Sequence record: NC_091964.1
Length of the DNA: 64,000 bases
Direction: 5' to 3' (one strand)
In this document: one piece after another, positions 1,291 to 50,172 of the stretch
How positions within the stretch are numbered: the stretch's first letter is position 1
Layout of the letters: every line of letters begins with the position of its first letter
Notes under the pieces: generated by a model
Seen by the model: only the letters and a program-made list of their open reading frames with translations
What the model was told of the DNA's origin: nothing
Database searches by the model: none
Position numbers and translations under genes: made by a program

Positions 1291-2658
1291 ATGGATCGTA
1301 TTCAATATCTTAAACATGCAGTCAAGGCAGGAGCTTGCTATTACAAGACCTGGCTTATTGACTCTATGGGGATCGTGGACTTACCGCCTAAACCTGAAAC
1401 GGTAGATGCAACGATTAACCCGTCACCTGGTCTGCGCAAAGACGAGCCGCCGCGTTATCCTCACGAAGAGCATCCGTACCAGTTATTCGATTTCAAAGGT
1501 ACGCCTGTATTCCTTAACCCTACGACGAATGAGTGGGAGCCTGTAGATGGCTACAAGAAAGGCGCGCCTTTCTTCCGCTTCAAGGAAGAGATTAATCTGG
1601 AACCGGGTGATATTGCGAACGTCAAAGAACCCATCACTACCTGGATCGGAAACCTCCTCGTCAACCAATGCGTTCTCTGTTACCCCTTCGGCGACCTGAT
1701 ACCTTTCCAGATGGGACAGTTCTCCATCAAGAAAGTAGAAGCAATTATCGCGTCCAAGTTAGAATCTCTGCCAGACGTAGGTCAGGCTCGTGACGAGACT
1801 AAGATCTACGTCGATACGTTAGAGAATTATTACTACGATGCTGCATATTCGCTTTCTGGATGGACGCAGCTCGCTGTACCGGCCGCATCACCTCATACGC
1901 TAATCACGGATCCTAAAATCCGTAAACGTCGTATAGAGCTTCTGAACGAGTATAAGGACCAACTCGACGATCCGGCTATTATTGCTAAGATCATGCAAGA
2001 GCTCATCGACATGGACGTAGCTTTCCAGGCAGACGATCCAGAAGGCGGTTATCTCCAGCCAGGTAAGTCTTTCGACGTAGTCCGTGCAAAAGCTTTCTTG
2101 ATGTACGGTATCGAACGCGACTTCAACGATCCGAACAAGATCGTGCTTATTGACAGACCTCTGTCGGAAGGCTGGGATATTACCAAGTTACCTTACATGG
2201 TCAATGCTTTGATCGAAGGTTCGTTCTACCGTGGTGCAATGACAGCCCTCGGTGGAGAAGGAGCTAAGTTCATTCAACGCTTCTTCTTGAACACAAACAT
2301 CATCGAAGAAGACTGTGGGGTTAAGTACGGTAAAACCACAATCCTGAAACCGAAGGATAAGGATGACTATCTCGGCGCATCTGTAGTAGGTCCCGGTGGA
2401 TCGCGCATCGAACTCACTGAAGAGAACTACGCGTCGTATGCAGGTAAAATACTACAAGTCTTCTCTCCGCAGTACTGCAAGACAAAACGCCCTAACTTCT
2501 GTGTGAAGTGTTTGGGTGCGCGCTATCGCGGTAAACCTAATTCACCTGCCGCCTTGGCGTCAGTAATCGGCTCGGTGTTGATGTATATCTTCATGAAGAA
2601 AATGCACGGCGTAGCACTGAAGACTAAGAAGTGGGACTGGCGGGCAACTGCTGAGTGA
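1291..2658 (+). CDS. Virion RNA polymerase beta-prime subunit, C-terminal part (phiKZ gp80-like)
   Basis: RpoC-like motifs NIIEEDCG (cf. VTEDDCG), SPQYCKTKRPNFCVKCLG (Zn site) and IGSVLMYIFMKKMH (trigger-loop region); size and synteny with the DNA polymerase fit. Confidence 0.88.
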   Translation: MDRIQYLKHAVKAGACYYKTWLIDSMGIVDLPPKPETVDATINPSPGLRKDEPPRYPHEEHPYQLFDFKGTPVFLNPTTNEWEPVDGYKKGAPFFRFKEEINLEPGDIANVKEPITTWIGNLLVNQCVLCYPFGDLIPFQMGQFSIKKVEAIIASKLESLPDVGQARDETKIYVDTLENYYYDAAYSLSGWTQLAVPAASPHTLITDPKIRKRRIELLNEYKDQLDDPAIIAKIMQELIDMDVAFQADDPEGGYLQPGKSFDVVRAKAFLMYGIERDFNDPNKIVLIDRPLSEGWDITKLPYMVNALIEGSFYRGAMTALGGEGAKFIQRFFLNTNIIEEDCGVKYGKTTILKPKDKDDYLGASVVGPGGSRIELTEENYASYAGKILQVFSPQYCKTKRPNFCVKCLGARYRGKPNSPAALASVIGSVLMYIFMKKMHGVALKTKKWDWRATAE

Positions 2659-2665
2659 GGTGAAG

Positions 2666-3310
2666 ATGTTAGAGACAATCCTCTCTAGAAAAGCAGGGGG
2701 AGGCATTGGTACAAATACTCTGTTACTGATGCAGGCTGATAAAGGGTTCACTGATATAGCTAACCCATCTCGTCTCGTACAGAAGTACTCTAACCCGGTG
2801 ATAGGATCAACTCAGTCTAAGTTTAGTAACGTTTCCTTCGACTGTACTGGCGGTGGTATCTTAATCCCTGCCGCCAGTAAGAAGGATCTCGTCTTCTCGG
2901 CTGATAAACCTTACACGATTGAGTTTTGGGCCTATAACACATCGCTCAATAATGTTTGGTGGCTTTACTCGGGACGTAGTTCTCAGAGTGACCTTAAGGT
3001 CTATAGCGGTAACGTATATTTACAGGATGAGGGCGGTAGTCTCTACGCTCCTTCCTCGTTCATGACTACCGGTAAGTGGGCACACGTCGCGATAGTTGGG
3101 ACTGCCAACGATAAAGTGAGATTGTTCGTAGATGGGAAAATCATAGGGGTTCCTTTCCTCCCTAAAGGTTGGGGCCATGTTAACCAACAAATGGTTATCG
3201 GCTCAGGTGAAATTAACTCCTGGGCGCACCTTGACCAAATCCGCATCTCCAACATAGCTCGTTATACTGCGGCTTTTACTCCCCCAACTGATCCTTTTGT
3301 AATAGATTAA
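2666..3310 (+). CDS. LamG/concanavalin A-like lectin-domain protein, MLE-tag family
   Basis: TLLLMQAD, YTIEFW, WAHVAIV, RLFVDG, LDQIRISNIARYTAAFTPPTDPF are typical LamG motifs; RBS GAGGTG before ATG 2666 (ORF track starts at 2660). Confidence 0.85.
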   Translation: MLETILSRKAGGGIGTNTLLLMQADKGFTDIANPSRLVQKYSNPVIGSTQSKFSNVSFDCTGGGILIPAASKKDLVFSADKPYTIEFWAYNTSLNNVWWLYSGRSSQSDLKVYSGNVYLQDEGGSLYAPSSFMTTGKWAHVAIVGTANDKVRLFVDGKIIGVPFLPKGWGHVNQQMVIGSGEINSWAHLDQIRISNIARYTAAFTPPTDPFVID

Positions 3311-3314
3311 AAGT

Positions 3315-3341
3315 AAGGGCTGCGGCCCTTCTTTTTTTTTT
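3315..3341 (+). terminator. Intrinsic terminator
   Basis: AAGGGC-TGCG-GCCCTT then C and T10. Confidence 0.85.
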
Positions 3342-3397
3342 GTAAAATATTAATCCCTTCTCCCTTATAATGAAACCCAACCCTGAGGACTATTAGG

Positions 3398-3691
3398 ATG
3401 GAAATTATTGTAACGGTTAGTGTTACAGGAGCTAACAAACTCGTAGTAAACAAGTCCAGAAAAGAAGTAGAAAATGTATCGGACACGTTCTCTGTTAATA
3501 CCAAAGAAGAATTGAGGACTCGCCTCCAGGCGTTCGTTAATTCATTCGGCGTCAAAGCGCCATTGAAAGAAAAGATTAAGATCGATGACGCGTTTGCGGC
3601 AATGATCGAACGCGCGGTTAATGACAACTCTGAAAAGCTGTCAGTAGGTGTACGCGACAACTTATACTTCTACCGCGTTTTCGAGCGCTGA
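3398..3691 (+). CDS. Hypothetical protein, 97 aa
   Basis: ORF after terminator with GAGGA/AGGA upstream; no motif. Confidence 0.7.
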   Translation: MEIIVTVSVTGANKLVVNKSRKEVENVSDTFSVNTKEELRTRLQAFVNSFGVKAPLKEKIKIDDAFAAMIERAVNDNSEKLSVGVRDNLYFYRVFER

Positions 3692-3698
3692 GGTCGCT

Positions 3699-4160
3699 AT
3701 GGAAGTTTCTGAATTCTTACGGGCTAGACTAGTCGATGGTTTAACTATGTTGGACTATGAAGCCGAGCAGCTAAAGGTATCCAGAGTCAACGAAAAGAAA
3801 CTCATCCCTTACGAACTCCTTCAGTGTAACGGGATAGCTCTGATCAAAAGCGTAATGCAGATCGTTCTTTTCGAAAAGAACTACACTGAACTGGCTTTTC
3901 ATTACAAGAAGTTAAACAAGCGCTTTCTTGAATCCTTCCCTGACTTCGACGATCTGGTGATCAACTATATCCAGATTCAAGGCATGGGGTTCGGTGCGCC
4001 AATCAATACCCCTACTCTCAAAACCCCTTATGGTGAATTAGTGTTAGGGTTACCTGATACTTTCGTTGCAGAGTTCTATCGTAACTTAAAAGCAACGATT
4101 GTTCCTGCTAACGATAACGACAATGTTGTCAAGGTGGATTTCGGTGGAAAGAAAGATTGA
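3699..4160 (+). CDS. Hypothetical protein, about 153 aa
   Basis: RBS GAGGT before ATG 3699 (track start 3648 overlaps the previous gene); ends NVVKVDFGGKKD. Confidence 0.7.
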   Translation: MEVSEFLRARLVDGLTMLDYEAEQLKVSRVNEKKLIPYELLQCNGIALIKSVMQIVLFEKNYTELAFHYKKLNKRFLESFPDFDDLVINYIQIQGMGFGAPINTPTLKTPYGELVLGLPDTFVAEFYRNLKATIVPANDNDNVVKVDFGGKKD

Positions 4161-4272
4161 TCTGTCTCAGTCAGATGAAGAAAACAATTCCGAACAAGAA
4201 GCCGAGCTAGGGGCACTACTAGAAGAACTTGTAGAAGTTCATGTAGCCGCTAAGTTTGGTAACGGAACTTAA
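4123..4272 (+). CDS. Possible small acidic ORF, 49 aa (not in ORF track)
   Basis: ATG 4123 reads MLSRWISVERKIDLSQSDEENNSEQEAELGALLEELVEVHVAAKFGNGT to TAA 4270-72 and fills the gap before the terminator; RBS weak. Confidence 0.4.
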   Translation: MLSRWISVERKIDLSQSDEENNSEQEAELGALLEELVEVHVAAKFGNGT

Positions 4273-4276
4273 TACA

Positions 4277-4307
4277 GGGACCTTCGGGTCCCCTTTATTT
4301 TTTTTTT
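4277..4307 (+). terminator. Intrinsic terminator
   Basis: GGGACC-TTCG-GGTCCC followed by a long T tract. Confidence 0.85.
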
Positions 4308-4338
4308 GTATGACAACCAATCCAACAGGGGCAGAGAT

Positions 4339-4992
4339 ATGTTAGAAAATCTATTAACGGGAGTATCTACTGTCCCGCCGAGTGGGGATGTTATATTCCA
4401 ACTCAAAGACTTTAAAACAGTGGATGATATAATCGACAGAGGTCCGTTATCAATCCCTGTAACGCGGGGTGGTGCTGTTTCCGTAGGTAGTGACGCTAAC
4501 GGTAGCTTTATTCAAATGCCAGGTGCAAGCTGGGCCGATATAGTCACGTTTGGTAGTGCGAAGTTGTCTTGTAATGAAGTAGAAGTAAATATAATTATCG
4601 GAGATATGGAAGATACTTCCGGTGCATACGGACCATGTATATTTGATGCACGTCCTCAGGGACAGAACGGAAACTACTTACTGTTCACCATCGTAGGTAG
4701 CCCAGACGCCATCGAGGGACATTATCGCGAATTCGTTATTAACTCCGGGCAGAATGGATTCTATCCTGGAGCTAAGCTTCCTAAGAACACTATAGGTAAG
4801 CTCAGAGTTAAGTGCCTTAAGAACAAGACGTTCATTTATTACAACGAACGTTTTGTTGCATCCTACAACGCAGGTATTAGTAACTTCATTGGAGACTATG
4901 CTGGGATAGGCCGTCATGCTTTCTCCATGGTTACAGGGACTACACCTTTGAAGGCGAAGATCTATTATTTCGATATTCGCAAGATTAGTTAA
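4339..4992 (+). CDS. Beta-rich lectin/LamG-like protein, MLE-tag family
   Basis: Starts MLENLLTG at ATG 4339 after AGGGG; Gly/aromatic-rich beta pattern; ends KIYYFDIRKIS. Confidence 0.65.
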   Translation: MLENLLTGVSTVPPSGDVIFQLKDFKTVDDIIDRGPLSIPVTRGGAVSVGSDANGSFIQMPGASWADIVTFGSAKLSCNEVEVNIIIGDMEDTSGAYGPCIFDARPQGQNGNYLLFTIVGSPDAIEGHYREFVINSGQNGFYPGAKLPKNTIGKLRVKCLKNKTFIYYNERFVASYNAGISNFIGDYAGIGRHAFSMVTGTTPLKAKIYYFDIRKIS

Positions 4993-5022
4993 TACTATGT
5001 AACTTTAACTGAGAGGTTTGAG

Positions 5023-5694
5023 ATGAGCAATCCAGATAACATTGCTGCTATGTTGGCAGCAAGTGGTGAGAAGGCAGCGGGTCAGGAAGAGAAAGAACAG
5101 TCTGCTGCTGCGGCTGCTGCGCAGAACGCCAGTATTGATAAAGTGTCAGTAGTCGACCCTACTGATACTCGCCAGGAAAACGCAGGTCTGACTGGTGCGG
5201 CACGCGATGTTGCTCCGGTTGTCCCGCAGACTCGCGAGCGGGAACAAAAGTTTGGCCCGATCGTTTCTTCTGCTGTTGCGACTATCAACGACTATGAAGT
5301 CAAGATGGCCGATAACGTTCGTGTAACTCCGGAGTATATCGACGCGCAACAGTCTCGCCTGTATAACGCTATTCGCGCTATCGTGACCGTTGAAGAAAGC
5401 TCCGAGTTCATGGGCGGTATGGAATTCCTGTTCCGTAAGTTCCATGAAGATAAGTACGGTGCTTTCAACGGCAGCACTATTCGCCGCCGTATCAACTTCA
5501 TGAAGAAGCCTTCCGGCGAACAGGCATTCAAAGCGTACACTGCGTTTATCGATCTTCTGCAAGTGTTCAGCGATCCGAAAGGTCGTAAAGTCCTGTGGGC
5601 GCGTTTCAACAAGCGTCAGGCACTTGACTTCCTGCAAGGTCAGCCAGAGCTGCGTCAGCGTCTGGAAACCTATATGAGCAAAATCTGTTCATAA
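5023..5694 (+). CDS. Hypothetical protein, 223 aa, Ala-rich low-complexity N-terminus
   Basis: RBS GAGAGG, TATG at 4996-4999, strongly biased codons. Confidence 0.8.
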   Translation: MSNPDNIAAMLAASGEKAAGQEEKEQSAAAAAAQNASIDKVSVVDPTDTRQENAGLTGAARDVAPVVPQTREREQKFGPIVSSAVATINDYEVKMADNVRVTPEYIDAQQSRLYNAIRAIVTVEESSEFMGGMEFLFRKFHEDKYGAFNGSTIRRRINFMKKPSGEQAFKAYTAFIDLLQVFSDPKGRKVLWARFNKRQALDFLQGQPELRQRLETYMSKICS

Positions 5695-5703
5695 CTGAGT
5701 TAG

Positions 5704-5753
5704 ACAGCATAAGCCCCCTCTTCCCCTTTCGGGGAAGAGGGGATATGTGCCGC
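5704..5753. terminator. Bidirectional hairpin between convergent genes, with ACRGCAYA-type flanks
   Basis: CCCCTCTTCCCC-TTTC-GGGGAAGAGGGG; ACAGCATA on the left, TGTGCCG on the right; no T tract. Confidence 0.75.
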
Positions 5754-5756
5754 TAC

Positions 5757-6239
5757 TTAAATAAACTTACCATCCCAGGGAATCGGGGCAGACATCCCCA
5801 GAGGATTGACTCGCATTACTTTACCAACTGTACTATCGAAATAGAGGAAGTCCAAAGCCTGTGATCCATTGAAGGTTCCGTAGGTAGAAGACGTATAGCC
5901 ATTTCGACTGAGGGATACGTACGAGGGATTAGAACCCAAATAGTGTAGCTTAAAAACGACGATCCTTTTACCAGTGATGTTCTCGTTAAGCAAATCAATC
6001 GTAGGGAAGCAGTGTTGGGCTACCCTACCCATAGGAGAGTCATAGGTAAACCTATTCCCCCAAGGAGTGCCCCACATAGTTCCAGAAGGTGAAGCCATTG
6101 TGGTTCTACAATAACCCTCCGTTCCGTTCGGTCTTACAGTAGGTCCAATATCCGTAAAACCCGAGACAGCTTTAACGAAAGAACCGTAATCAACATTACC
6201 TGCAATTAGGTTCTTCCCTGACAGTAGTGTCTCTAACAT
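5757..6239 (-). CDS. Hypothetical protein, 160 aa, MLE-tag family
   Basis: Starts MLETLLSGK after RBS GGAGG; Gly/Tyr/Thr-rich. Confidence 0.75.
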   Translation of the reverse strand: MLETLLSGKNLIAGNVDYGSFVKAVSGFTDIGPTVRPNGTEGYCRTTMASPSGTMWGTPWGNRFTYDSPMGRVAQHCFPTIDLLNENITGKRIVVFKLHYLGSNPSYVSLSRNGYTSSTYGTFNGSQALDFLYFDSTVGKVMRVNPLGMSAPIPWDGKFI

Positions 6240-6253
6240 GAAACCTCCAAAAA

Positions 6254-6664
6254 CTATTTACCCTCAATAGGATTGGAGCTAATTTTCTTTCCGTAGTACG
6301 CCATGTACTTAGAGGATTTCTGCGACCAGTAAGAACGGTAACGTCCTTTACCCGGACCTCTCTTAACCTTGATGGTAATCCGTACATGCCGGAAGATCTC
6401 TTCTTCGCGGCGCAGCGCGTGAGGGTAATTGGGTTTGATATCTTCTGGTCGTAAGATAAATGGAAAAGGGTCGGACCAAGGAAAGAGCACGGTAGGTGTG
6501 GTCATTCCTCTACCGATCATGGCAGTACCGACATAGTCCTCGCCATTGTCTCCCTTTACCAGAACGAGCCCAGGTTCGGCACGACCGCATTCAAACTCCA
6601 CCAATGCCCGTTCCAACGTTTCGGCTATATTTGTCTCCTCGGTGGAAGATTCAAATTCGTTCAT
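6254..6664 (-). CDS. Hypothetical protein, 136 aa
   Basis: Co-oriented ORF coupled to neighbours, RBS GGAGG-like upstream; basic C-terminus. Confidence 0.65.
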   Translation of the reverse strand: MNEFESSTEETNIAETLERALVEFECGRAEPGLVLVKGDNGEDYVGTAMIGRGMTTPTVLFPWSDPFPFILRPEDIKPNYPHALRREEEIFRHVRITIKVKRGPGKGRYRSYWSQKSSKYMAYYGKKISSNPIEGK

Positions 6665-6858
6665 AACGGATCACCCTCCTTCCTCGTTAGAACACGCATC
6701 AGGTCAATAGGTTTATTGTTACCTATCCCTACTTCCTGAAAACGTCTTAGCTGTTCGTTGAAGATCTTCTTGGCGAGCTCGCGTGCAGCAGGGCCATGTA
6801 CGATTTGGCAATTAAAGGTAATTTCATGCGTTACTTCGGTTGTTTTCTGGTCGGCCAT
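6661..6858 (-). CDS. Hypothetical protein, 65 aa
   Basis: Start overlaps the DNA polymerase stop; GAGGTGG upstream. Confidence 0.6.
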   Translation of the reverse strand: MADQKTTEVTHEITFNCQIVHGPAARELAKKIFNEQLRRFQEVGIGNNKPIDLMRVLTRKEGDPL

Positions 6859-8750
6859 TATGCCACCTCACGTTTGTAACCGATCTTACGTTCGTAGCTA
6901 CGCATCCATTCTACTGGACGAGGCATGTTACAAATCGTAGTACCGATATCAATTGCATTTACACGGCCAGAAGGCAAGTTAATACCTGCGCGCCGCTGTT
7001 GTTCAAAATCAATACCCGCCATCGAGCACATGACACGGTAGATCGTATCGCGAGCAATGTTCATCCATACGCCGGTTGACGGATAAGAAGATTTAACGTC
7101 AATGTCAAGTACGAGTTTAACGATCTTCGTAAACACGCCTTCTGACTCAGTTAGCACCTTCCTTCCCATCTCGTGGTGTATAAGGTGAGCAGCCAATGTA
7201 CAGATCCACCCTTCGAGGCTAACAGAGTGTTTATCCATCTCTGTTTCCATCTGGTCGGATACGCCGCTTAAAACAAACCCTTGTTCCAGTAAGAAGAAGT
7301 ACAAGTCATCACCTAACTTTCTCCCCTGTGAACCGTATGATTGCAGTTCTGAGAACTGACATTGGTTAGGGAAGGTAAAGCATAAGTCCAACGTTGCCTC
7401 ATCAAGTTGTTGCGCCCCTAAGTTATCCCACTGGTTATAGACGCAGTAGAAGATCTTATGGTTAGCCTGCATATCACGGTGCCAGTCTGCGCCGGTAGAG
7501 TTGGTCAGGTCATCGCCTTTCAACTTACCATGACCCAGCTCTTTCTCCAGAATACTACCCAGAGAGTAAGATGGTTCTTTCGACAGGTGGCGACGTACGA
7601 AACGACGTACTGACATTTGGTCAGCCCAGAAGAACGAAGACGGAGCTGTAACAGCATGCCAACGATCCCACGGGTCTTTCGATTCTGCTTTACCGTTCGC
7701 ATCTTCGATCTTAGCCGCACCTTCACGGAAGTTGAAGTAACGCAGGTCACGTGGAATGCACGGATCGCAGTAAACGTCTTTCGGGTCGTATCCTTCTTTT
7801 TCTAAAGCCTTGGTCATGTTGCCCAAGTCAAAGGGAAGGTTCCAGATAGACAGAATATCTGGTTTCCATTCGTGGACACGCTTAAAGGTTTCGACAACAG
7901 CTTTAGCGGGAGTACTAACGACAATTACTTCTGTCTCTAGCTTAATATCCTGACGCTTGACCGGTAAGGTTACAGAGTTGAGCTGATACCATTTTTCGTA
8001 AGGAAGATCTTTCTCGCTGACACCATTCTCTTTACAATACTTCTTCCAGCATTTCTTTAACTTGCCTTCGAGTAATAAAGGAATGATCTCTTCTTCCTGC
8101 TTCTGCATGATCTTTTCAACAGGGTTTTGAATTGTCCCCAAGAAACTCTGTACCACTGCCTGGAATAAACGATCGCCCATGGATACGGAAACCATGTTGA
8201 TCGCCCTTTCCTTTGTATTCATGTCAGTCTCGATATCGAGGTGACAGGTTGTGTTATAGGTAACCAGGTCAGGGTATTTCGTGCGGTACTTGTGCTTTAA
8301 CAGCACCTGAGGTGAAACATCAGTACCGGCAATGAACGGGTTTCGGTTGATGATCTTCATCCCACCGTTAGTACCGGCTTTCAGTGCACGGGCCGCCGCG
8401 TCTTTAAGTTGACGCTGATTCGACTTATATTCGCGACACCACTCTAAAGGTATCCATGCACGCTTTTGTTTAAAGGTACGATAGCTATCGCGTACAACGT
8501 AGAAAGGTTTCTGGAAATTCCGGATAATACGAATGTTTGGTTCTGTTGTATTATCGTCGTAATGAATTCGTTCTTTGATGATTACAGCATCGTCGGTCTG
8601 GTTCGCTTGGGAGACGACGTAAGAGCTATGTTTGAATTCGTAGCCAATGATCTTTTTGCTCACGATTCGCTCCAATCCGTTAGTAAAAGTAAAATGTGTT
8701 CTATAGTAATAAACATTGACTTCTATTATGAAATCACTGTACCTGGTCAT
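6858..8750 (-). CDS. Split family-B DNA polymerase, 3'-5' exonuclease plus motif A half (phiKZ gp82-like)
   Basis: ExoI HLDIETD, ExoII WNLPFD, ExoIII YNQWD, PolB motif A LDIDVKSSYPS near the C-terminus; motifs B and C absent. Confidence 0.88.
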   Translation of the reverse strand: MTRYSDFIIEVNVYYYRTHFTFTNGLERIVSKKIIGYEFKHSSYVVSQANQTDDAVIIKERIHYDDNTTEPNIRIIRNFQKPFYVVRDSYRTFKQKRAWIPLEWCREYKSNQRQLKDAAARALKAGTNGGMKIINRNPFIAGTDVSPQVLLKHKYRTKYPDLVTYNTTCHLDIETDMNTKERAINMVSVSMGDRLFQAVVQSFLGTIQNPVEKIMQKQEEEIIPLLLEGKLKKCWKKYCKENGVSEKDLPYEKWYQLNSVTLPVKRQDIKLETEVIVVSTPAKAVVETFKRVHEWKPDILSIWNLPFDLGNMTKALEKEGYDPKDVYCDPCIPRDLRYFNFREGAAKIEDANGKAESKDPWDRWHAVTAPSSFFWADQMSVRRFVRRHLSKEPSYSLGSILEKELGHGKLKGDDLTNSTGADWHRDMQANHKIFYCVYNQWDNLGAQQLDEATLDLCFTFPNQCQFSELQSYGSQGRKLGDDLYFFLLEQGFVLSGVSDQMETEMDKHSVSLEGWICTLAAHLIHHEMGRKVLTESEGVFTKIVKLVLDIDVKSSYPSTGVWMNIARDTIYRVMCSMAGIDFEQQRRAGINLPSGRVNAIDIGTTICNMPRPVEWMRSYERKIGYKREVA

Positions 8751-11598: not shown

Positions 11599-12977
11599 CA
11601 CGTTCTATTGTACTTCCTGTTAACGGTCAGTCGAACCCTATGTTCACGCTGATCGATCCTAACGGGGAAGATCTTCACACGCATCTCATGGAACTTAACC
11701 GCGCCCATGCTGATGAAGAAGTTCGTAAGAACACCGGCGAAAAGCTGGTTTCCGAACTTGAGCGTATCCGCGATAACATTACTGACTCTGGTCAGGTAAA
11801 TCGCCGTGATATGGAAGAGGTAGAGGCAACCAGTGGTGTTGCTATCGAATCTTACCCGATCGGTGCGTTCACTGAGCGTAAATCTAAAACGGGCCTGACC
11901 ATTGCTCTTGAAGAGATCGATGTTCGCCGTGCCGGTTTTATTGCCGCGGGTATCGTCGCTGGTCTGGCGCTTCTTTATAAAGTCGTCAAGTGGTTTATCG
12001 GCCGGGTACGTAGTACAGCGGGTGGTGGTGGTGGCGGTTCTGCTAAGTTCAATGGCGGGAAAAGTGACGAAGAGTACAAAAAGGAAATCGAACAACTCGA
12101 ATCGGATATTGCCGAAGCTGAGAAAGCTCAGAAGGGTCTTGACCCGGAAGCTGGCTTAGATGCAGACGGTAAGAAGAAGTACGATGACGACGTTGCTCGC
12201 TACCTGGATGCTCGTACTATCTTTGTTGAAAAGATCATGTACGGTAATCCCTCGTACTCTCGCGCCTTCTCTCAATTTGTACCGGCGTTCATGGACCGTT
12301 ACGCAAAAGAGCGTCAGTTGCTGGAATCTGTTATTGAAAAGCTGAAAGACTTCAGCGATATCGAAGCAGGTGAAGTTACTGAGAAGGACCTCAACGGTTT
12401 GGCTGCGATCTCTCAGTCCATGGATGAGTCAGGCTTCTCCATGAACAAGTGGGATCAGTATCAAGTATTCATGAAGGCATGCGGTGTTTCTTCCGGCGGG
12501 ACCAAAACCCTTAAAGAAGCAACAGCAGAGCTCATGGATCGCTTCAAGAAGGAGATGGAGAAACCTTCTAAGCTACGTCCTGCGGATATCAAGGGCCAGC
12601 GCCTGAAGCGCGTTAATGACGATATCGTTAACTCGATCAATTGTCTTGATGACCAGGAAGATTCCGGCGGGTTCACCAACCACTACTTCTATATCCCCCA
12701 GGAAGATCTGGACAAGGGTATCGATGAGCTGGATAAAACTGCTGAAGAGATCAAAAAGATCGGTGAGGCATTCAGAGAGAAGCATAAAGAGTCTTACGGT
12801 GCTACTGCTGTTAAAGCGATGCAGATGATGACCACTATCATCGGCCAGTTGGGCCAACGTAATACTCTGATCAACTTCCCTATCATGATCAACGAACTTA
12901 TCGGTAAAGAACATCGTAAGTTCCTGAACGTGGCTCGTGAATTCGGTAGTAAATACGTCGTCGTTACTCGTAGCTGA
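11595..12977 (+). CDS. Probable inner-head protein, 460 aa
   Basis: Propeptide-like N-terminus with VAIE/IALE sites, then hydrophobic AGFIAAGIVAGLALLYKVVKWF, poly-Gly linker and helical charged body. Confidence 0.7.
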   Translation: MTRSIVLPVNGQSNPMFTLIDPNGEDLHTHLMELNRAHADEEVRKNTGEKLVSELERIRDNITDSGQVNRRDMEEVEATSGVAIESYPIGAFTERKSKTGLTIALEEIDVRRAGFIAAGIVAGLALLYKVVKWFIGRVRSTAGGGGGGSAKFNGGKSDEEYKKEIEQLESDIAEAEKAQKGLDPEAGLDADGKKKYDDDVARYLDARTIFVEKIMYGNPSYSRAFSQFVPAFMDRYAKERQLLESVIEKLKDFSDIEAGEVTEKDLNGLAAISQSMDESGFSMNKWDQYQVFMKACGVSSGGTKTLKEATAELMDRFKKEMEKPSKLRPADIKGQRLKRVNDDIVNSINCLDDQEDSGGFTNHYFYIPQEDLDKGIDELDKTAEEIKKIGEAFREKHKESYGATAVKAMQMMTTIIGQLGQRNTLINFPIMINELIGKEHRKFLNVAREFGSKYVVVTRS

Positions 12978-13021: not shown

Positions 13022-15963
13022 TATGTTTCAGGAAGGTGAAGATCCCACTCGAACTTGATATCTTCTTTAACGATGATCTTACCATCGTCATTTAAAGCAG
13101 CCAGGCGACGCACTGTCGCACGATAAGCATCATCTGCCGTTGTGAAGGTGGCAATTTCCTTACCGTCGCTAAGCATTGTCATCTTAAAGCCGCTCAGACG
13201 ATCATCTACGTTCTGTACGATCTTGGACGTGATAGCAGCTGTTGATACCGTACGGTTTTTGAGCACTGCTGAAATAGATGAATTACAGAGGCTCTCTACC
13301 ATTTCACGGAAGTCGTTATCGCGGTAGCCTGTTTCAGTTGCGTACAGGATAAACTGGAAAGTAAGCTGTGATTGGATATTAACTTCCACCGCATCGTCAA
13401 TCAACACCGGGATATTACTCAGCGTCTTCTTCGGATACAGGAAGATGTTTGTCTTCTCAAGCTTGCGCTTAGAAAGCGTTTCCAGCGCCGGGATGTACGT
13501 ATCTACAATACTGTCAGACAGGAACTTAAGATCCGTCTTCGACGTTGTATCGTTAGCGTAGTAGTAAACACCGTCAACCATGAAGATCTCGGAGAGACGG
13601 AGAATAGGACGTTCGCTAACCGGGATTGGTTCCTTAGTCGCTTCGTCAATGATCAGACTGTCCTTAGGATAAAGAACCTTCTGCTTACCATCGACCATTA
13701 CCGGATCACCTTTGGAATGTAACTTGTTAAAAATTACTTTCCCATCAGCACCGATTGTAAACTTACGAGCTTTGGTAACCGGATCCATTTCGTAGACATC
13801 GTCTTCCCAAACAGCCATAACATCCTGAGCGTATTTCTTAAACTCAGTTGCACCGCCCAGGGAACGACAGTTGGCCCACAGGCTCTTCAACGCTGTACCT
13901 AACTCTAACCCTACCTTCTCAACCGTAACGCCGTAGATATCCAACGGCAGCAAGGTCTTACCCAGGTAACCATCCACGTCGCTGTAGTCTAAACCATCAA
14001 CGATGTAATCGGTCACTGAGTAGGTCAGAACAAAGTCAGTCGAGAGAGGTAAAGGAAGAGAGCGAGGAACGGCTGTGAAGATAGCAAAGTTATCGACAAT
14101 CAAATTGTCGTTGCCATCCAAGTCAAACGTACAGTGAATCGGGAATTCCCAGGTATCATAAACTGCCTGGTTCTGCTCGATCCTACCGACGTATCGGCCG
14201 TTCAGGTATGCGTAGTTAACTTCACCGTAAGGAATAAAGCCAATCTGCGCAAAACGCTGGTCTTCACGTAAAGCCTGCCAGTTCGCACCCACCTGTGCCA
14301 CAATCGTCAACATGTAACCGTCGGCGGTACGCTGAAGGTCAAATGCAGTTGTGGAGATTTCGAGCTGCGTGGTTTCGTTCTCGTGAATAAATTCACGGGT
14401 CGTTTGACGGGGATTCTCCAAGCGGTACGGTCGCAGTTCGAAGTTGTTGTCGTTCGTATCCAATACGTAATGGAAAGGACTGAAGACATAGTGAGCAGAG
14501 TTAATCGTATTGATCAACGTCTCAGTTGTATTAGCCACAAGCTCAGGATACTTGTCTGCTTCGACCAACGACAGAATACCATCGTTAATACGGAAGAGTG
14601 TGGCCGGACTGATAGTGACGCGATTACCGTTGTCGTAGACGCCTGGGTATTTCACCAGATCATCAGCCTTAACCTGGAGCGCCATGATACCGCAGCTAGG
14701 AGCAGCAGTGAAGTTTGACGCTGTAGCAGGAGAAAGCGTTTTAGACGCCAGATAAACACGATCCGTCAGATCATCACGATTCTTGATCACGTCGAAGCCC
14801 ATGGTCCCTAGACGAGATTCAATCTGCGCGGGCGTAATAGGAACGTCGATGATAGAAACGTTATTGATGATGAGGTTCTGCATCTCGTTGAACGTCAAGC
14901 CTAACGAGCCCCCAGTAATCGATTCAGCTGAATACAGAGAATGCTCAAGGCTACGAATAGGAGCAGCGTAAGGTTCCAGAGAAGGATCATCAAGATCTTC
15001 CTTCCAGTTAACTTTAAAGCTCGCTGCCTGCAACGTAGAGAGGTCGCGCTCCATTGGTCCCTTGGTAGTATAGACATCAAAGCGAATGCTCGTACCGGCG
15101 GGTACAAGGCCATTATTGATGTATACCGGAGGAATGCGGTAGTTAACCACGTTCTCTTCCACGGTAACGATGACAGTCGGCTTAGTAGCCGAGTACACGA
15201 ACTCTGAGTACGTTGTTGCGAACTCAGTCCAACCACCGTCATCAGACCCGAAGAACACGCGAGTGTTATGGAAGTAGTCAGAGTAGGCCTGGTTAAAGAC
15301 GTACGTGCCGCCTTCTATCGTGTCTTTGTTGACACTCCGGGTCAGCTGTAACATCTCCATCGTAATGTCCAGGAACTCACGCCCTTCCGGAGAGCGCGTG
15401 ATATACCAGTCAACAACGTTATCGTCGAGTGACATCAGAGGAGATTTCTTGTCGGTGTTAGATACGATCATCAACGGCGCTTTGGTATTCGTAACACCTT
15501 TATGTACTGGCTGGCGAATCTCGATCGGGTACAACAACAACAGGCTGGTTTGGTTATCAATGAAGATCTCGGTATTACGCGGAATAACAACCTTACGCAA
15601 TTGAGAACCTGGGACAGTAACCATCTGCCCCACGAGTTCTTCCCGCGGGAACATAACGTGCATCTTAACGGCAGAAGGTTGTGACCAGCGGTCGACCATG
15701 TCGTAGTCAGATGCGTTAGCATACAAGTCACGCATGGTACGGGAGAGTAAAGAATAGTTGCGACGATCACCAGCCATCGATTCTTCAATCTGGACGCAAG
15801 CTTGCGCAGATGAGATTTCTAACTGCTGAACCATCGGCGATAAAGGATCAGGAACGACCTTACCTTGAAGACGTGCTTCAATATAGTCAATCCCTGTCTG
15901 GACAAAAGCCCAGGGGTTTCTTACCGCAAGACGTGTGCGCTTTAAGATATCATAATCAGCCAT
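13021..15963 (-). CDS. Large virion structural protein, probable baseplate component (phiKZ gp87-like)
   Basis: About 980 aa, beta-rich; synteny upstream of inner-head genes; start MADYD at 15963 after RBS GAGG. Confidence 0.7.
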   Translation of the reverse strand: MADYDILKRTRLAVRNPWAFVQTGIDYIEARLQGKVVPDPLSPMVQQLEISSAQACVQIEESMAGDRRNYSLLSRTMRDLYANASDYDMVDRWSQPSAVKMHVMFPREELVGQMVTVPGSQLRKVVIPRNTEIFIDNQTSLLLLYPIEIRQPVHKGVTNTKAPLMIVSNTDKKSPLMSLDDNVVDWYITRSPEGREFLDITMEMLQLTRSVNKDTIEGGTYVFNQAYSDYFHNTRVFFGSDDGGWTEFATTYSEFVYSATKPTVIVTVEENVVNYRIPPVYINNGLVPAGTSIRFDVYTTKGPMERDLSTLQAASFKVNWKEDLDDPSLEPYAAPIRSLEHSLYSAESITGGSLGLTFNEMQNLIINNVSIIDVPITPAQIESRLGTMGFDVIKNRDDLTDRVYLASKTLSPATASNFTAAPSCGIMALQVKADDLVKYPGVYDNGNRVTISPATLFRINDGILSLVEADKYPELVANTTETLINTINSAHYVFSPFHYVLDTNDNNFELRPYRLENPRQTTREFIHENETTQLEISTTAFDLQRTADGYMLTIVAQVGANWQALREDQRFAQIGFIPYGEVNYAYLNGRYVGRIEQNQAVYDTWEFPIHCTFDLDGNDNLIVDNFAIFTAVPRSLPLPLSTDFVLTYSVTDYIVDGLDYSDVDGYLGKTLLPLDIYGVTVEKVGLELGTALKSLWANCRSLGGATEFKKYAQDVMAVWEDDVYEMDPVTKARKFTIGADGKVIFNKLHSKGDPVMVDGKQKVLYPKDSLIIDEATKEPIPVSERPILRLSEIFMVDGVYYYANDTTSKTDLKFLSDSIVDTYIPALETLSKRKLEKTNIFLYPKKTLSNIPVLIDDAVEVNIQSQLTFQFILYATETGYRDNDFREMVESLCNSSISAVLKNRTVSTAAITSKIVQNVDDRLSGFKMTMLSDGKEIATFTTADDAYRATVRRLAALNDDGKIIVKEDIKFEWDLHLPET

Positions 15964-34530: not shown

Positions 34531-35193
34531 ATGCTTGAGAGTATGTTAGCTGGAAAGCAGGTCGATAAGAATGTCCTTATCGATATTGATTTCTCCAGAC
34601 AAGATATCGGCGATACCTTCATGACAGATCTTGCAGGTAACCAGTGGGACCTTGTAGGAAATGATCCGGACTGTAAAGTAGTCTCGGATAGTGTGAAAGG
34701 TAAAGCATTCAGATTTAAGGGAACAACTTATTTTAGGAGTCCCTTGGTTAGCAGGCTGCTACTTGCTAACGTTAGCTTCTCATTAGAGTTAGGCATTCAC
34801 TCAGATGCATCGGCCTCTGGTGTTATTCTAGGGACAGGTAACTATCCTTCTTCCGGGGGCATCTTAGGCGGGTTTAACTTATCTACAGGTCAATACCCTG
34901 CCACCTACATTCAAATGTTCATGACTAACTCTAGCGGTGTTTATCAACGCTGTTTACCAGCTAACACTGCATGGGCCAATACGTGGGACGACATCATCTT
35001 TACTCGTCGACGTAACACCAGTGTATTTGGGCAGGTTACTCGTAACGGTGTTATTACCGGAACTAACTCCGTAGGGGATAATCCATTCGGTAACGGTAAA
35101 GATTATTTCTGTATTGGGGCTAATGCGCATATACTCGGAACATCTGGATTCAAAGGTTTAATCAGTAGAATCAAACTTAAGTTACTAACTTGA
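34531..35193 (+). CDS. LamG/ConA-like beta-sandwich protein, MLE-tag family
   Basis: RBS GGAGGAGG; starts MLESMLAGK; DLAGNQW, AFRFKG, FSLELGI, FCIG...FKGLISRIKL fit a LamG-like fold. Confidence 0.75.
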   Translation: MLESMLAGKQVDKNVLIDIDFSRQDIGDTFMTDLAGNQWDLVGNDPDCKVVSDSVKGKAFRFKGTTYFRSPLVSRLLLANVSFSLELGIHSDASASGVILGTGNYPSSGGILGGFNLSTGQYPATYIQMFMTNSSGVYQRCLPANTAWANTWDDIIFTRRRNTSVFGQVTRNGVITGTNSVGDNPFGNGKDYFCIGANAHILGTSGFKGLISRIKLKLLT

Positions 35194-35195
35194 GG

Positions 35196-35223
35196 GAAGG
35201 GCTTAGGCCCTTCTTTTTTTTTT
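35196..35223 (+). terminator. Intrinsic terminator
   Basis: GAAGGGC-TTAG-GCCCTTC plus T10. Confidence 0.85.
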
Positions 35224-46696: not shown

Positions 46697-47566
46697 ATGG
46701 CGAGTACTAACCCCGCTCCTAATGGGTATTATAACCGCCCAAGTGATGACTTGTGGTGGGCGATCTTCACTCGCGACAACCCTCGTATTGACTATCAGCA
46801 GAACCAAGTGCGCGTATCGCAAATGTTACCGAATGATTCCGGTGATGTTAAGCGCAACACAAAGGGTAAGCTGGTCGCTATTCCTGGGATGGGTCGTGAG
46901 GGCGAGGAATGGTTAACCTGGAACCGTCCTTACATGGAAGAACTCTTTAAAGATAAAGAGGTCTGGATTCCACCGAATAACCAACATACCCTCAGTGAAC
47001 TGATCGACACGTTCAACCAGATCTGGAAATTCCAGTTATCTGCACGTGACTTCTACGATCAGAACATTGAGATCACAACGCTACCTGCTACTTTCCAGGT
47101 AGTGATGCGACCAACCTGTTTGTGTTTCCAGGGTACGCTTACTCTCCATGTAGGTAACCCGAAGGTACATATTGGCGAAGTCATTATTAACCGTGATCTT
47201 GCAGGGCTGCAATACCCGACCGATCAGAGAGTAAAAGCTCAGGGTCCTTTAATGGTCTTCGAGCGTAACTTTACCTTCGCCGGTCAAACCCTGAAAGAGA
47301 AGTTTGGTTATGATGACCTTATCTCTGCGGACCAGTTAGACATTCTCAACGATCTGTTCGAACAGCAATGGACAATGAGCAATGCGACCAGTGACTGGAA
47401 CTTACAGGGGGCGACAGTAGTCTATAACGGACCTGCTATCGATTCCCCATCGCCGTGTAACACCGATTACGAAAACGTTCTCCTTATTCAGTTGGATGAC
47501 GTCTTGTGCGGTAATGTAGCCGGGCACCTTAATCTCCACTACAACGTTATTAAGGCTCCTAAATAG
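46697..47566 (+). CDS. Virion structural protein, baseplate-region paralog family
   Basis: N-terminal beta domain, IINRDLAGLQYP motif, C-terminal LQGATVVYNGP domain. Confidence 0.7.
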   Translation: MASTNPAPNGYYNRPSDDLWWAIFTRDNPRIDYQQNQVRVSQMLPNDSGDVKRNTKGKLVAIPGMGREGEEWLTWNRPYMEELFKDKEVWIPPNNQHTLSELIDTFNQIWKFQLSARDFYDQNIEITTLPATFQVVMRPTCLCFQGTLTLHVGNPKVHIGEVIINRDLAGLQYPTDQRVKAQGPLMVFERNFTFAGQTLKEKFGYDDLISADQLDILNDLFEQQWTMSNATSDWNLQGATVVYNGPAIDSPSPCNTDYENVLLIQLDDVLCGNVAGHLNLHYNVIKAPK

Positions 47567-47609
47567 TTTGAGGAAGTAACCTCAACTCCGACCTTATAAG
47601 GAAACTATC

Positions 47610-48164: not shown

Positions 48165-48178
48165 CGGCTAATTAAGAC

Positions 48179-48213: not shown

Positions 48214-48258
48214 ATTTTATGTCGACGACACACCCTTTCCTTATAAGGAGCCATTTCG

Positions 48259-49254: not shown

Positions 49255-50172
49255 ATGGAACTTTTCTTTAAAGATCCTATCGTCCAGATTATCGACGAGC
49301 TCAACGCGAAGAACAGCACAACGCTGAAGCGACCGTTGACCGTTAACGATCTGACCTTTACCGAGGTTAGTAGCAACGAAGATACAGGCGCACGTGAAGT
49401 GATCGCTCGCCCTGCATCTGGCGCCGAGTACTTCGGTATCATCCGTAATCCGGGCATCACGTACCATCGTTACGTCGGTACTAAGATGTTCGTCGTTCAG
49501 CCGCGTATTTGGGGCGTGAAGGGTGAAACGTACCCTGACCTTATCCAACGCATGGCCCAGTTGTATAATCTGCCTCCGTTCACTATCGAACCTAAAGCCG
49601 GTGATACAACTAAGCCGTACGACTTCGGTAAAGAAGTTCATGACCAGAAGATCGACCAGGGCGACGACTGGCTTAACTTCACGATGCAGATCTCCTTCCA
49701 TGCAAGTTCTCTTGGCTGGGTAGGAATGTTCCCGATCGTCGTGTACAACGCAGAGCGTGACCTTGGTAAGATTATCAAGGATACCGCACTTGATGCGCTG
49801 GCTTATCCTGACGATACCGAAGGTAGCGCGGGCTCGATGTCTACCCTGACCTATCCGATCGAATTTGAGCTACCTGCAAGCGCGCAGGCGACGTTGTCTA
49901 CTGTTGGCAGTAAGTTAGCCAGCGATGTTAATGACGACACCGTCAAGGCCATTATCGATCAGATTCTGGAGTACTACGAATTCAGCATCCCAAGTGATGC
50001 TCGCGATTCTCTTGAATCTACGGTGCCAGGATCCACTGTTCTGACCACTAACCTGGGCGACAGTGCGCAGACTAGCAAGCAAGTTGTTCTTCAGATGACA
50101 AGTCCGTCAGGGGCTTCTCCGATGTTCGTCGGTAAGATCTACCTGAACAACCCTTCCTTCAGTCCTGCCTAA
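49255..50172 (+). CDS. Virion structural protein, baseplate-region paralog family
   Basis: RBS GGGAG; LGKIIKDTALDALAYP motif. Confidence 0.68.
   Translation: MELFFKDPIVQIIDELNAKNSTTLKRPLTVNDLTFTEVSSNEDTGAREVIARPASGAEYFGIIRNPGITYHRYVGTKMFVVQPRIWGVKGETYPDLIQRMAQLYNLPPFTIEPKAGDTTKPYDFGKEVHDQKIDQGDDWLNFTMQISFHASSLGWVGMFPIVVYNAERDLGKIIKDTALDALAYPDDTEGSAGSMSTLTYPIEFELPASAQATLSTVGSKLASDVNDDTVKAIIDQILEYYEFSIPSDARDSLESTVPGSTVLTTNLGDSAQTSKQVVLQMTSPSGASPMFVGKIYLNNPSFSPA

What the first reader, a model, noticed from the sequence alone, without database searches (positions are those of the whole stretch)
2666..6239. Dispersed family of lectin-like proteins sharing only an MLE[TNS][ILM]L start
Seen: four genes begin MLETILSRK (2666), MLENLLTGV (4339), MLETLLSGK (6239, minus strand) and MLESMLAGK (34531). 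They then diverge into different 160-220 aa beta-rich bodies, two with clear LamG/ConA motifs. They use rare codons (TTA, ATA, AGA) more than core genes and are slotted between core genes, with a terminator directly after three of them. Inference: a roughly 9-aa docking tag lets interchangeable carbohydrate-binding modules attach to a common virion site, like a plug-in receptor-binding toolkit.
Basis: partly seen in the sequence, partly recalled or inferred. Interest (0 to 1): 0.7.

Follow-up and report, generated by a model that had tools for sequence, protein, structure and literature searches.

The report
Shared start tag on phage binding modules
A jumbo Serratia phage encodes at least nine small, mostly sugar-binding-type proteins of several unrelated folds that all begin with the same ~9-residue peptide, most likely a common docking tag that hangs interchangeable host-recognition modules on the virion tail, although the docking site itself has not been found.

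Summary
The window is bases 1-64000 of Serratia jumbo phage PCH45, a chimallivirus. The four MLE.[ILM]L starts are real, sit at annotated CDS starts and are far beyond chance: 0.03 expected among 225 CDS, 6 strict matches genome-wide plus 3 close variants.

The nine tagged proteins have at least four body types: LamG/ConA-like jelly rolls, a Kelch propeller, and PHROG families 6409 and 1062. A Gly/Pro/Ser-rich linker follows the tag. In a confident AlphaFold model the tag lies outside the fold.

In the unrelated Rak2-like phage CBB, the same mix of Kelch, LamG and gp34-like modules carries a different shared start (MLPF.R...YGN). Several of those proteins were detected in virions. Two body types occur elsewhere as C-terminal domains of DUF7941 peripheral-baseplate fibre proteins. 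Two tagged genes lie directly downstream of the PCH45 tail-fibre gene. The nearest relative, SPLA10, keeps the tag but carries partly different bodies.

Best reading (about 0.55): an N-terminal docking peptide for exchangeable accessory host-binding modules. Virion location in PCH45 and the socket are not shown. "Sharing only the start" is overstated, because three of the four window proteins share a fold. I rate it a new variant of a known principle, of moderate to high interest.

The parts
2666..3310 (+). gp4, 214 aa. Tag MLETILSRK (2666-2692), Gly-rich linker, then a LamG_3 jelly-roll body.
   Evidence: (Pfam Laminin_G_3, 34.7 bits against a cut-off of 27.6). The closest relatives, at 38-44% identity and including the tag, are in rV5-like phages. 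Against a 97%-identical relative, 15 synonymous and 2 non-synonymous codon differences.
3315..3340 (+). Terminator-like hairpin plus T-run directly after gp4.
4277..4302 (+). Terminator-like hairpin plus T-run just upstream of gp8. It isolates gp8 from the preceding genes.
4339..4992 (+). gp8, 217 aa. Tag MLENLLTGV, Pro/Ser linker, then a PHROG 6011 body (same family as gp34). No terminator follows; gp9 starts 30 nt downstream.
   Evidence: (phrog_6011, E 1e-15, full length). Against the close relative, 18 synonymous and 3 non-synonymous codon differences.
5715..5742 (.). G+C-rich hairpin between the convergent genes gp9 and gp10; probably a two-way terminator.
   Evidence: sequence read directly.
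5757..6239 (-). gp10, 160 aa. Tag MLETLLSGK, then a PHROG 6409 body of unresolved fold. The same body is the C-terminal domain of a DUF7941 virion protein in SPN3US.
34531..35193 (+). gp34, 220 aa, directly after the major capsid gene gp33. Tag MLESMLAGK, then a ConA-like jelly roll from about residue 14 (PHROG 6011, LamG_3).
   Evidence: (pLDDT 93 overall; residues 1-10 average 61).
35197..35223 (+). Terminator-like hairpin plus T-run directly after gp34. Its stem is nearly identical to the one after gp4.
46697..47566 (+). Context, not a tagged gene: gp43, a DUF7941 peripheral-baseplate fibre protein and homologue of phiKZ gp127. In other chimalliviruses this anchor family carries the gp10-like and gp109-like bodies as C-terminal domains.
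   Evidence: bioRxiv 10.64898/2026.04.21.720040.
49255..50172 (+). Context: gp46, a second DUF7941 protein.

Best explanation
The roughly 9-residue start M-L-E-x-[ILM]-L-x-G-[KR] is an N-terminal docking peptide. It is joined by a short flexible Gly/Pro/Ser linker to small, self-contained binding modules: ConA/LamG-like jelly rolls, a Kelch propeller and two further body types. The peptide would fit a common socket on the tail periphery, either a fibre or the outer baseplate. The phage could then display a changeable set of accessory host-surface-binding modules without fusing each one to a fibre gene. The modules are accessory cassettes that move between phages and differ between relatives.

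Shown here: the tag, its enrichment, its presence on non-homologous bodies, the linker, the lineage-specific alternative tag, and fusion of the same bodies to baseplate-fibre anchors in other phages.

Inferred: virion location in PCH45, the socket, and glycan binding. The best socket candidate is the gp111 collagen/fibritin-like tail fibre with its downstream gp110.
For: 1. Nine PCH45 genes carry the tag against 0.03 expected. Conservation is in the protein, not the DNA.
2. The bodies are non-homologous. gp4 and gp108 are LamG_3. gp8, gp34 and gp66 are PHROG 6011. gp10 is PHROG 6409. gp102 is a Kelch propeller. gp64 and gp109 are PHROG 1062/3589.
3. Each tag is followed by a G/P/S-rich stretch. 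In the confident gp34 model the fold starts near residue 14, and residues 1-10 have low confidence and no secondary structure.
4. Among 65 cluster representatives of the gp34 family drawn from 1.84 billion proteins, about 49 start MLE-like and 13 start M[LIF]PF.R...YGN.
5. In phage CBB, eight neighbouring Kelch, LamG_3 and gp34-like small proteins all start MLPF.... Some are annotated as structural proteins. The CBB paper reports the Kelch protein CBB_552 in the mature virion (PMC5259590).
6. The gp10 body is the C-terminal domain of a DUF7941 virion protein of SPN3US. PHROG 3589 joins a DUF7941 N-terminal domain to a gp109-like body. DUF7941 proteins are proposed peripheral-baseplate host-recognition filaments.
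7. gp109 and gp108 lie directly downstream of the tail fibre gene gp111 and of gp110. The Tn-seq preprint calls gp111 an essential tail fibre.
8. Across 135 kb of the 148.6-kb genome of rV5-like phage 4MG, the only proteins shared with PCH45 are the tagged modules, gp111, gp110, gp141, a DprA-like protein and RNR beta.
9. SPLA10 has five tagged genes, four of them in a row, with a partly different set of bodies.
10. The tagged genes have atypical codon usage and their own terminators. gp4 and gp8 are under purifying selection.
Against: - There is no direct evidence that the PCH45 proteins are in the virion. The proteome table of the preprint is not held, and its text does not mention them.
- No socket was identified.
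- The same tag occurs in chimalliviruses, rV5-like phages and PhiEaH1, which share very few structural proteins. A common socket must therefore itself be a laterally shared protein.
- The candidate families are widespread, so co-occurrence is weak evidence. The gp141 family also occurs in 121Q-like jumbo E. coli phages; whether those carry the other tag was not checked.
- In 4MG and CR3 the tagged genes sit among small early or accessory genes, not in the tail module.
- Part of the family is ordinary paralogy: gp8, gp34 and gp66; gp4 and gp108; gp64 and gp109.
- A 6-9 residue peptide is very short for a stable interface.
Confidence: 0.55

Rival explanations
1. Plain paralogy. One ancestral small jelly-roll virion protein was duplicated and diverged. 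The start is simply its slowest-evolving stretch and has no separate docking role.
For: gp8, gp34 and gp66 hit PHROG 6011 over their full length, including the first residues. gp4, gp34 and gp108 are all LamG_3. gp64 and gp109 share PHROG 1062. The whole gp34 family has a uniform length of 210-228 aa.
Against: - The Kelch propeller gp102, PHROG 6409 and PHROG 1062 bodies are not jelly-roll relatives.
- The tag lies outside the fold in the gp34 model.
- The same body family carries two alternative tags. In CBB, the other tag is shared by Kelch and LamG proteins.
- One gp10-family member (P0007) lacks the tag altogether.
Confidence: 0.12
2. The tag is an assembly-time handle, not a permanent anchor. 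It would be recognised by a fibre-assembly or chaperone protein, such as the DUF4376 protein gp110 or the DUF1353 protein gp107. That protein would fold, oligomerise or deliver the modules, which then attach through their bodies or act in the cell.
For: gp108 and gp109 lie between gp110 (DUF4376) and gp107 (DUF1353, PHROG 'tail assembly chaperone'). gp110 is one of the few proteins shared with 4MG. The tag is very short.
Against: Seven of the nine tagged genes are nowhere near these chaperone-like genes. Lineage-specific tags on many bodies fit either model, so nothing here separates this rival from the best explanation.
Confidence: 0.13
3. The tag is a sorting or packaging signal. Either it is a capsid-targeting sequence like that of the T4 internal proteins (known from the literature, not tested here), which would bring the proteins into the prohead, or it is a capsid-decoration handle. 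gp34 is encoded right after the major capsid gene.
For: gp34 follows gp33 (MCP). The tag's length and N-terminal position resemble a targeting peptide. PHROG files family 6011 under 'head and packaging', though this is a coarse category.
Against: - Lectin-like and Kelch bodies, and their fusion to baseplate-fibre anchors in SPN3US-type phages, point to the outside of the tail.
- No protease-type site follows the tag.
- The other eight genes are not near head genes.
- The tag also occurs in phages with quite different heads.
Confidence: 0.08
4. The proteins are non-virion accessory ('moron'-like) proteins that act in the infected cell or on its envelope. The tag would bind a host factor or membrane.
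For: The genes have atypical codon usage, their own terminators and a location among early or accessory genes in rV5-like phages. Both tag types occur in phages of Enterobacterales.
Against: Tag type follows phage lineage, not host: CBB and the POP phages both infect Pectobacterium yet carry different tags. Homologues are annotated or detected as virion proteins in CBB, and annotated as virion structural proteins in SPN3US, CR5 and others. The tag is not a signal peptide and has no lipobox.
Confidence: 0.08

Closest known systems
Branched receptor-binding-protein systems of Klebsiella podophages (KP32, K11, KP34). [quoted passage not shown]
   Same: A short conserved N-terminal peptide, not a folded anchor domain, tethers an exchangeable specificity module to a platform protein. 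The modules are swapped laterally.
   Different: In Klebsiella phages the cargo is a trimeric beta-helix depolymerase tailspike, one per phage. Here the cargo is nine small lectin-like, Kelch or other modules of 160-311 aa. No T4gp10-like domain was looked for or found here. The peptide sequence is unrelated as far as can be judged, and the hosts are large myoviruses.
Chimallivirus DUF7941 'fibre cloud' proteins, such as Goslar gp22/gp23 and gp86/gp92/gp161 and phiKZ gp126/gp127 (bioRxiv 10.64898/2026.04.21.720040).
   Same: A paralogous set of virion proteins in the same phage family that hang carbohydrate-binding or other recognition domains on the peripheral baseplate. The gp10-like and gp109-like bodies occur as their C-terminal domains in other phages. 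A linker peptide docking onto a neighbour is the proposed assembly principle.
   Different: The tagged proteins have no DUF7941 domain. Their common element is 9 residues, not a domain of about 150 residues. The tag also occurs outside chimalliviruses, where the preprint says DUF7941 is absent.
phiKZ gp131-gp135 fibre paralogues. Shared N-terminal domains co-assemble into a hetero-hexameric fibre base, and the C-terminal domains differ; gp131 has a seven-bladed propeller (PMC13250141).
   Same: A common N-terminal element with differing distal domains, including a beta-propeller, on a chimallivirus baseplate.
   Different: The shared element in phiKZ is a folded domain plus a helix, and the proteins are much larger. 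No sequence match to the tagged proteins came back from the PDB searches.
T2/S16-type gp38 adhesin on the tip of the long tail fibre (established knowledge, not tested here).
   Same: A small separate protein, encoded downstream of the fibre gene, that attaches by its N-terminal part to the fibre tip and supplies receptor specificity. This mirrors the position of gp108 and gp109 downstream of gp111.
   Different: gp38 uses a folded N-terminal attachment domain and a polyglycine-sandwich receptor domain, with one adhesin per phage.
PHROG 6011 and RefSeq 'virion structural protein' of rV5-like, Rak2-like and PhiEaH1-like phages.
   Same: gp8, gp34 and gp66 are members of PHROG 6011. Relatives such as CR3 gp255, PhiEaH1 gp002/gp003, 4MG gp182 and CBB gp430 have the same size and fold.
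   Different: The family is only a name. None of the papers read here describes a function, a location on the virion or the shared start.

Membership tests
Pfam PF13385 Laminin_G_3 (ConA-like lectin/glucanase superfamily) | Match to the family model at or above the gathering score | tested here: met
   gp4 scores 34.7 bits and gp34 27.7 bits against a cut-off of 27.6; gp108 scores 54.3 bits. gp8, gp10, gp64, gp66, gp102 and gp109 have no hit. Membership therefore holds for three of the nine.
Pfam PF13385 Laminin_G_3 (ConA-like lectin/glucanase superfamily) | Two-sheet jelly-roll fold | tested here: met
   The gp34 AlphaFold model (pLDDT 93) is all-beta. Its Foldseek PDB matches (E 1e-9 to 1e-7, TM about 0.6) are lectin-like jelly-roll domains, including the arabinanase AbnA domain 4. 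The resemblance is at fold level only.
Pfam PF13385 Laminin_G_3 (ConA-like lectin/glucanase superfamily) | Carbohydrate binding | not testable with these tools
   No binding-site analysis or assay was possible. This rests on fold alone.
PHROG 6011 'virion structural protein' | Full-length match to the family profile, length about 215 aa | tested here: met
   gp34 E 8e-44, gp8 E 1e-15 and gp66 E 2e-22, each nearly end to end. All 65 relatives in 1.84 billion representatives are 210-228 aa except one fragment.
PHROG 6011 'virion structural protein' | Presence in virions | tested here: inconclusive
   CBB relatives are annotated 'structural protein', and CBB_552 (Kelch, same cluster) was found by mass spectrometry. 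For PCH45 the proteome table is not held.
Docking-peptide / branching-domain RBP systems (Klebsiella KP32/KP34 type) | Short conserved N-terminal peptide on an otherwise variable receptor-binding protein | tested here: met
   Nine proteins share the peptide, followed by a linker and variable bodies. This is by analogy only; no sequence relation was tested.
Docking-peptide / branching-domain RBP systems (Klebsiella KP32/KP34 type) | T4gp10-like branching domain on a primary RBP that receives the peptide | not tested
   No search for T4gp10-like domains in PCH45 tail proteins was made. gp111 and gp141 gave no such Pfam hit.
Docking-peptide / branching-domain RBP systems (Klebsiella KP32/KP34 type) | Cargo is a trimeric beta-helix depolymerase | tested here: not met
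   The bodies are LamG, Kelch and other small domains. PCH45 therefore works like this system but is not a member of it.
Pfam PF25613 DUF7941 (chimallivirus peripheral-baseplate fibre proteins) | DUF7941 N-terminal module | tested here: not met
   None of the nine tagged proteins hits DUF7941. gp43, gp46, gp140 and the SPN3US protein that carries the gp10-like body do.
T4-type capsid-targeting sequence | An N-terminal peptide of about 10 residues ending in a prohead-protease site, removed in the mature internal head protein | not testable with these tools
   No processing data are available. The defining features are recalled from the literature. The tag is followed by a Gly/Pro linker rather than an evident cleavage motif.

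The most novel reading that the evidence does not exclude
Large myoviruses of Enterobacterales may use a cross-lineage plug-and-socket system. Very short N-terminal peptides, MLE..L.GK in PCH45, SPLA10, rV5-like phages and PhiEaH1, and MLPF.R...YGN in Rak2-like phages, would act as standard connectors. Small lectin-like, Kelch and other binding modules could then be exchanged laterally and displayed on a shared fibre or baseplate socket. This would give each virion a mixed, quickly changeable coat of accessory adhesins.
Probability: 0.35. Interest if true: 0.8.

Novelty: new variant of a known kind. Interest (0 to 1): 0.62.

Why it matters
How giant phages mount and renew their many host-recognition parts is largely unknown. 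Recent virion structures of phiKZ, Goslar, phiTE and phi92 still leave abundant small virion proteins and peripheral density unassigned.

A 9-residue connector shared by unrelated binding modules, with a different connector in another phage lineage, would give a simple sequence rule for finding accessory adhesins in genomes. It would also explain why these genes behave as mobile cassettes. And it would point structural work to a defined peptide-socket contact.

The hypothesis can be tested with data that largely exist already: the virion proteome, the Tn-seq table and cryo-EM maps.

Tried and rejected
- **PDB sequence searches.** Searches with gp4 and gp34 gave nothing meaningful. gp141 gave nothing and gp111 only a marginal fibre hit.
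- **Word-indexed protein search.** It returned only 2 relatives for gp34 and 5 for gp10.
- **gp10 structure.** The AlphaFold model from 6 sequences was poor (pLDDT 62) and Foldseek found no fold match, so the gp10 fold stays unresolved.
- **NCBIfam.** No family names any of the nine proteins.
- **gp65 as docking partner.** gp65 lies between gp64 and gp66. It was rejected because it is a chimallivirus core gene (phiKZ gp161) absent from rV5-like phages.
- **gp141 as tag-specific partner.** It was weakened because its family is spread over many phage types. That spread includes 121Q-like jumbo E. coli phages; whether those carry the other tag was not checked.
- **DUF7941 linker as model for the tag.** No MLE-like motif occurs in gp43, gp44 or gp46, and DUF7941 is reported absent outside chimalliviruses.
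- **mRNA or translation-signal explanation.** Rejected because the tag codons vary synonymously.
- **PCH45 virion proteome and Tn-seq tables.** They are not held as text, and the main text does not mention gp4, gp8, gp34, gp108, gp109 or gp103. gp10, gp64, gp66 and gp102 were not searched for by name.
- **Collection-wide DNA pattern scan for the tag.** Not run. With about 23-28 bits of information it would return mostly chance matches.

Full report
**Identity of the window.** Bases 2000-8000 match Serratia phage PCH45 (MN334766.1, 212,807 bp) at 100% identity at the same coordinates, so the window is the first 64 kb of that genome. [quoted passage not shown] The record annotates nearly everything as 'hypothetical protein'. 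Counting CDS in order reproduces the published gene numbers: gp3 is a vRNAP subunit, gp33 the major capsid protein, gp50 thymidylate kinase and gp111 a tail fibre. The four genes of the finding are therefore gp4, gp8, gp10 and gp34.

- All four ORFs start with MLE.[ILM]L at the stated positions, and these ATGs are the annotated starts.
- From amino-acid composition or from the internal frequency of the motif, 0.02-0.03 such starts are expected among 225 CDS.
- The rest of the genome holds two more strict cases: gp102 (MLESILSALNK) and gp108 (MLEAMLTGRK).
- There are also three close variants: gp64 (MLEALGGSTK), gp66 (MIESLLPVS), and gp109, which has a GTG start followed by LEILTSKK.
- The codons for the shared residues differ synonymously between genes, so selection acts on the peptide and not on an RNA or DNA signal.
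- The codon-usage claim is correct for gp4, gp8 and gp34 and for most out-of-window members. TTA+ATA+AGA make up 4.5% of codons against 1.7%, and GC3 is lower. It is not correct for gp10.
- Hairpin terminators follow gp4, gp10 and gp34, and also gp64 and gp102. None follows gp8.
- In a 97%-identical relative from a public sequencing run, gene order is the same. gp4 and gp8 show many more synonymous than non-synonymous differences (15:2 and 18:3), so they are maintained genes. gp10 shows 7:9.

**What the proteins are.**
- gp4, gp34 and gp108 pass Pfam Laminin_G_3.
- gp8, gp34 and gp66 match PHROG 6011 'virion structural protein' over their whole length.
- gp10 matches PHROG 6409.
- gp102 is a Kelch beta-propeller.
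- gp64 and gp109 match PHROG 1062/3589.

Pairwise BLAST of the window proteins finds nothing beyond the first ~36 residues of gp4 and gp10. With a 66-sequence alignment, AlphaFold gives a confident gp34 model (pLDDT 93). It is an all-beta jelly roll beginning near residue 14, and residues 1-10 average pLDDT 61 with no secondary structure. Its PDB matches are generic lectin-like jelly-roll domains. The gp10 model is poor and matches nothing. Part of the family is therefore ordinary paralogy, and three of the four window genes share a fold. But the tag also heads folds that cannot be homologous to a jelly roll.

**Architecture.** After the tag each protein has a short stretch rich in Gly, Pro and Ser before the first body strand. 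Examples are GGGIG, STVPPSG, PLPPSDKP, SLGSGLALGPGPQ and NKPSRQPG. In the gp34 family the first body strand starts at position 15-21. The hydrophobic residues at positions 1, 2, 5 and 6 would fall on one face of a two-turn helix capped by Gly. This last point is inference from the sequence.

**Comparative evidence.**
- *Cross-lineage relatives.* The nearest relatives of gp4 (38-44% identity, tag included) and of gp34 lie mostly outside the chimalliviruses. They are found in rV5-like Vequintavirinae (4MG, GAP31, PVP-SE1, CR3, the POP phages), in PhiEaH1, in Rak2-like jumbo phages and in others.
- *Tags in those relatives.* 4MG gp170 starts MLEAMLTAGK, PhiEaH1 gp003 starts MFESNLMGKK, and 4MG gp182 starts MEEMLLVGGGK.
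- *A small family with two starts.* An exhaustive HMMER search with gp34 finds only 65 cluster representatives, and all but one fragment are 210-228 aa long. About 49 start MLE-like and 13 start M[LIF]PF.R...YGN.
- *The second tag on the same module mix.* In Pectobacterium phage CBB (Rak2-like), a cluster of eight small genes comprises three Kelch proteins, two LamG_3 proteins, two annotated virion structural proteins (one of them gp34-like) and gp442. All eight start MLPF[SPAT][RI]..[EKQ]Y[GA]N.
- *Virion detection in CBB.* Several of these carry the original authors' 'structural protein' label. The CBB paper reports the Kelch protein CBB_552 in mature virions, along with a small cluster of virion proteins found by mass spectrometry.

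A second phage lineage thus has the same assortment of bodies under a different shared start. This is the strongest argument that the start is a lineage-matched connector and not a remnant of common descent.

**Link to the tail.**
- The gp10 body is the C-terminal domain of a 439-aa SPN3US virion structural protein whose N-terminus is Pfam DUF7941.
- PHROG 3589 combines a DUF7941-type N-terminal part, matched by PCH45 gp43, with a gp109-like body.
- PCH45 gp43 is a homologue of phiKZ gp127, which is modelled in the outer peripheral baseplate. gp46 and gp140 are further DUF7941 proteins.
[quoted passage not shown] Some carry carbohydrate-binding, hydrolase or LRR domains for host recognition.
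- The tagged PCH45 modules are thus free-standing versions of domains that other chimalliviruses fuse to a baseplate-fibre anchor.
- gp109 and gp108 lie directly downstream of gp111 and gp110. gp111 is a 1156-aa collagen/fibritin-like tail fibre reported as essential, and gp110 is a DUF4376 protein. A DUF1353 protein, gp107, follows them.

**Search for the socket.**
- A comparison of all PCH45 ORFs with 135 kb of the 148.6-kb 4MG genome finds only six shared proteins or groups: the tagged modules, the C-terminal half of gp111, gp110, gp141, a DprA-like protein and RNR beta.
- If one socket serves both phages, it should be among gp111, gp110 and gp141.
- The gp111 family also occurs in Certrevirus, Agricanvirus and Ralstonia jumbo phages, and more weakly in phiKZ-like phages.
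- The gp141 family is far more widespread, so it is a poor candidate for tag specificity. That spread includes 121Q-like jumbo E. coli phages; whether those carry the other tag was not checked.
- gp65, flanked by gp64 and gp66, is a chimallivirus core gene. This confirms that tagged genes are inserted next to core genes, and it rules gp65 out as a shared partner.
- The socket remains unidentified.

**Variation between relatives.** SPLA10, the closest distinct phage (core proteins 50-76% identical), has five tagged genes in the region equivalent to PCH45 1-9 kb. Four stand in a row and start MLESMLTT, MLESMLTS, MLESMLLQ and MIETMLGN. Two bodies are gp10-like, one is gp109-like and two match no family. 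The tag is kept while the cargo changes.

**Conclusion.** The best-supported reading is an N-terminal docking peptide that tethers exchangeable accessory binding modules to the tail periphery (confidence about 0.55). Its rivals are plain paralogy, an assembly-chaperone handle, a head-targeting or decoration signal, and non-virion accessory proteins. The first of these is contradicted by the non-homologous bodies and the alternative tag. The others cannot be excluded without localisation data.

The principle of a short conserved N-terminal peptide docking a receptor-binding protein is known from Klebsiella podophages. Shared N-terminal anchors on variable fibre proteins are known in phiKZ and in DUF7941 proteins. 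None of the papers read here mentions this tag, its nine-fold use on small lectin-like and Kelch modules, or the alternative tag in Rak2-like phages. I therefore rate it a new variant of a known kind.

Noticed in passing
window 46697-50172; MN334766.1 138743-139594: PCH45 has at least three DUF7941 proteins: gp43 and gp46, and gp140 outside the window. gp44 (47610-48164) shares PHROG 2935 with gp43 and may be a fourth, truncated member. gp140 sits directly upstream of the large tail protein gp141.
   Followed up: partly
window 3315-3340 and 35197-35223: The terminators after gp4 and gp34 have almost the same stem (AAGGGC-loop-GCCCTT) and a 10-T run, followed by an AT-rich stretch. Similar hairpin plus T-run elements precede gp8, gp34, gp102 and gp109. 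This looks like a recurrent terminator/promoter cassette boundary in this genome.
   Followed up: no
window 54059 (inside gp52, 53999-54742): MLEQILTMV occurs 20 codons inside an annotated gene with a different body. It is either chance or a mis-called start, and was not counted as a family member.
   Followed up: no
L012 (Salmonella phage SPLA10) 11116-13704: Four consecutive tagged genes. Two of them (11629-12288 and 13057-13704) match no Pfam or PHROG family and may be new module types.
   Followed up: partly
L009 (Pectobacterium phage CBB) 2013-7281 and 11788-12435: Eight neighbouring small Kelch, LamG and gp34-like genes all begin MLPF.R...YGN. CBB is the phage with unexplained whisker-like hairs along its tail, whose protein has not been identified (PMC5259590).
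   Followed up: partly
MN334766.1 139613-143611 (gp141): Residues 285-1197 of this non-essential tail protein are 35-40% identical to tail proteins of rV5-like, Felix-O1-like, SPN3US-like, 121Q-like and ~53-kb Salmonella/E. coli phages. This is a very widely exchanged ~900-aa tail module with no Pfam family.
   Followed up: partly
window 5757-6239 compared with L014 10001-10483: Against a 97%-identical relative, gp10 has 9 non-synonymous and 7 synonymous codon differences. Neighbouring genes are overwhelmingly synonymous, although gp11 (6254-6664) is also fast-changing at 14:21. This may reflect relaxed or diversifying selection, but the numbers are small.
   Followed up: no
P0007 (gp10-family protein from a metagenome contig): A 162-aa relative of gp10 (52% identity over the body) lacks the MLE start and begins with an unrelated 30-residue stretch. 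The body therefore also exists without this tag.
   Followed up: no
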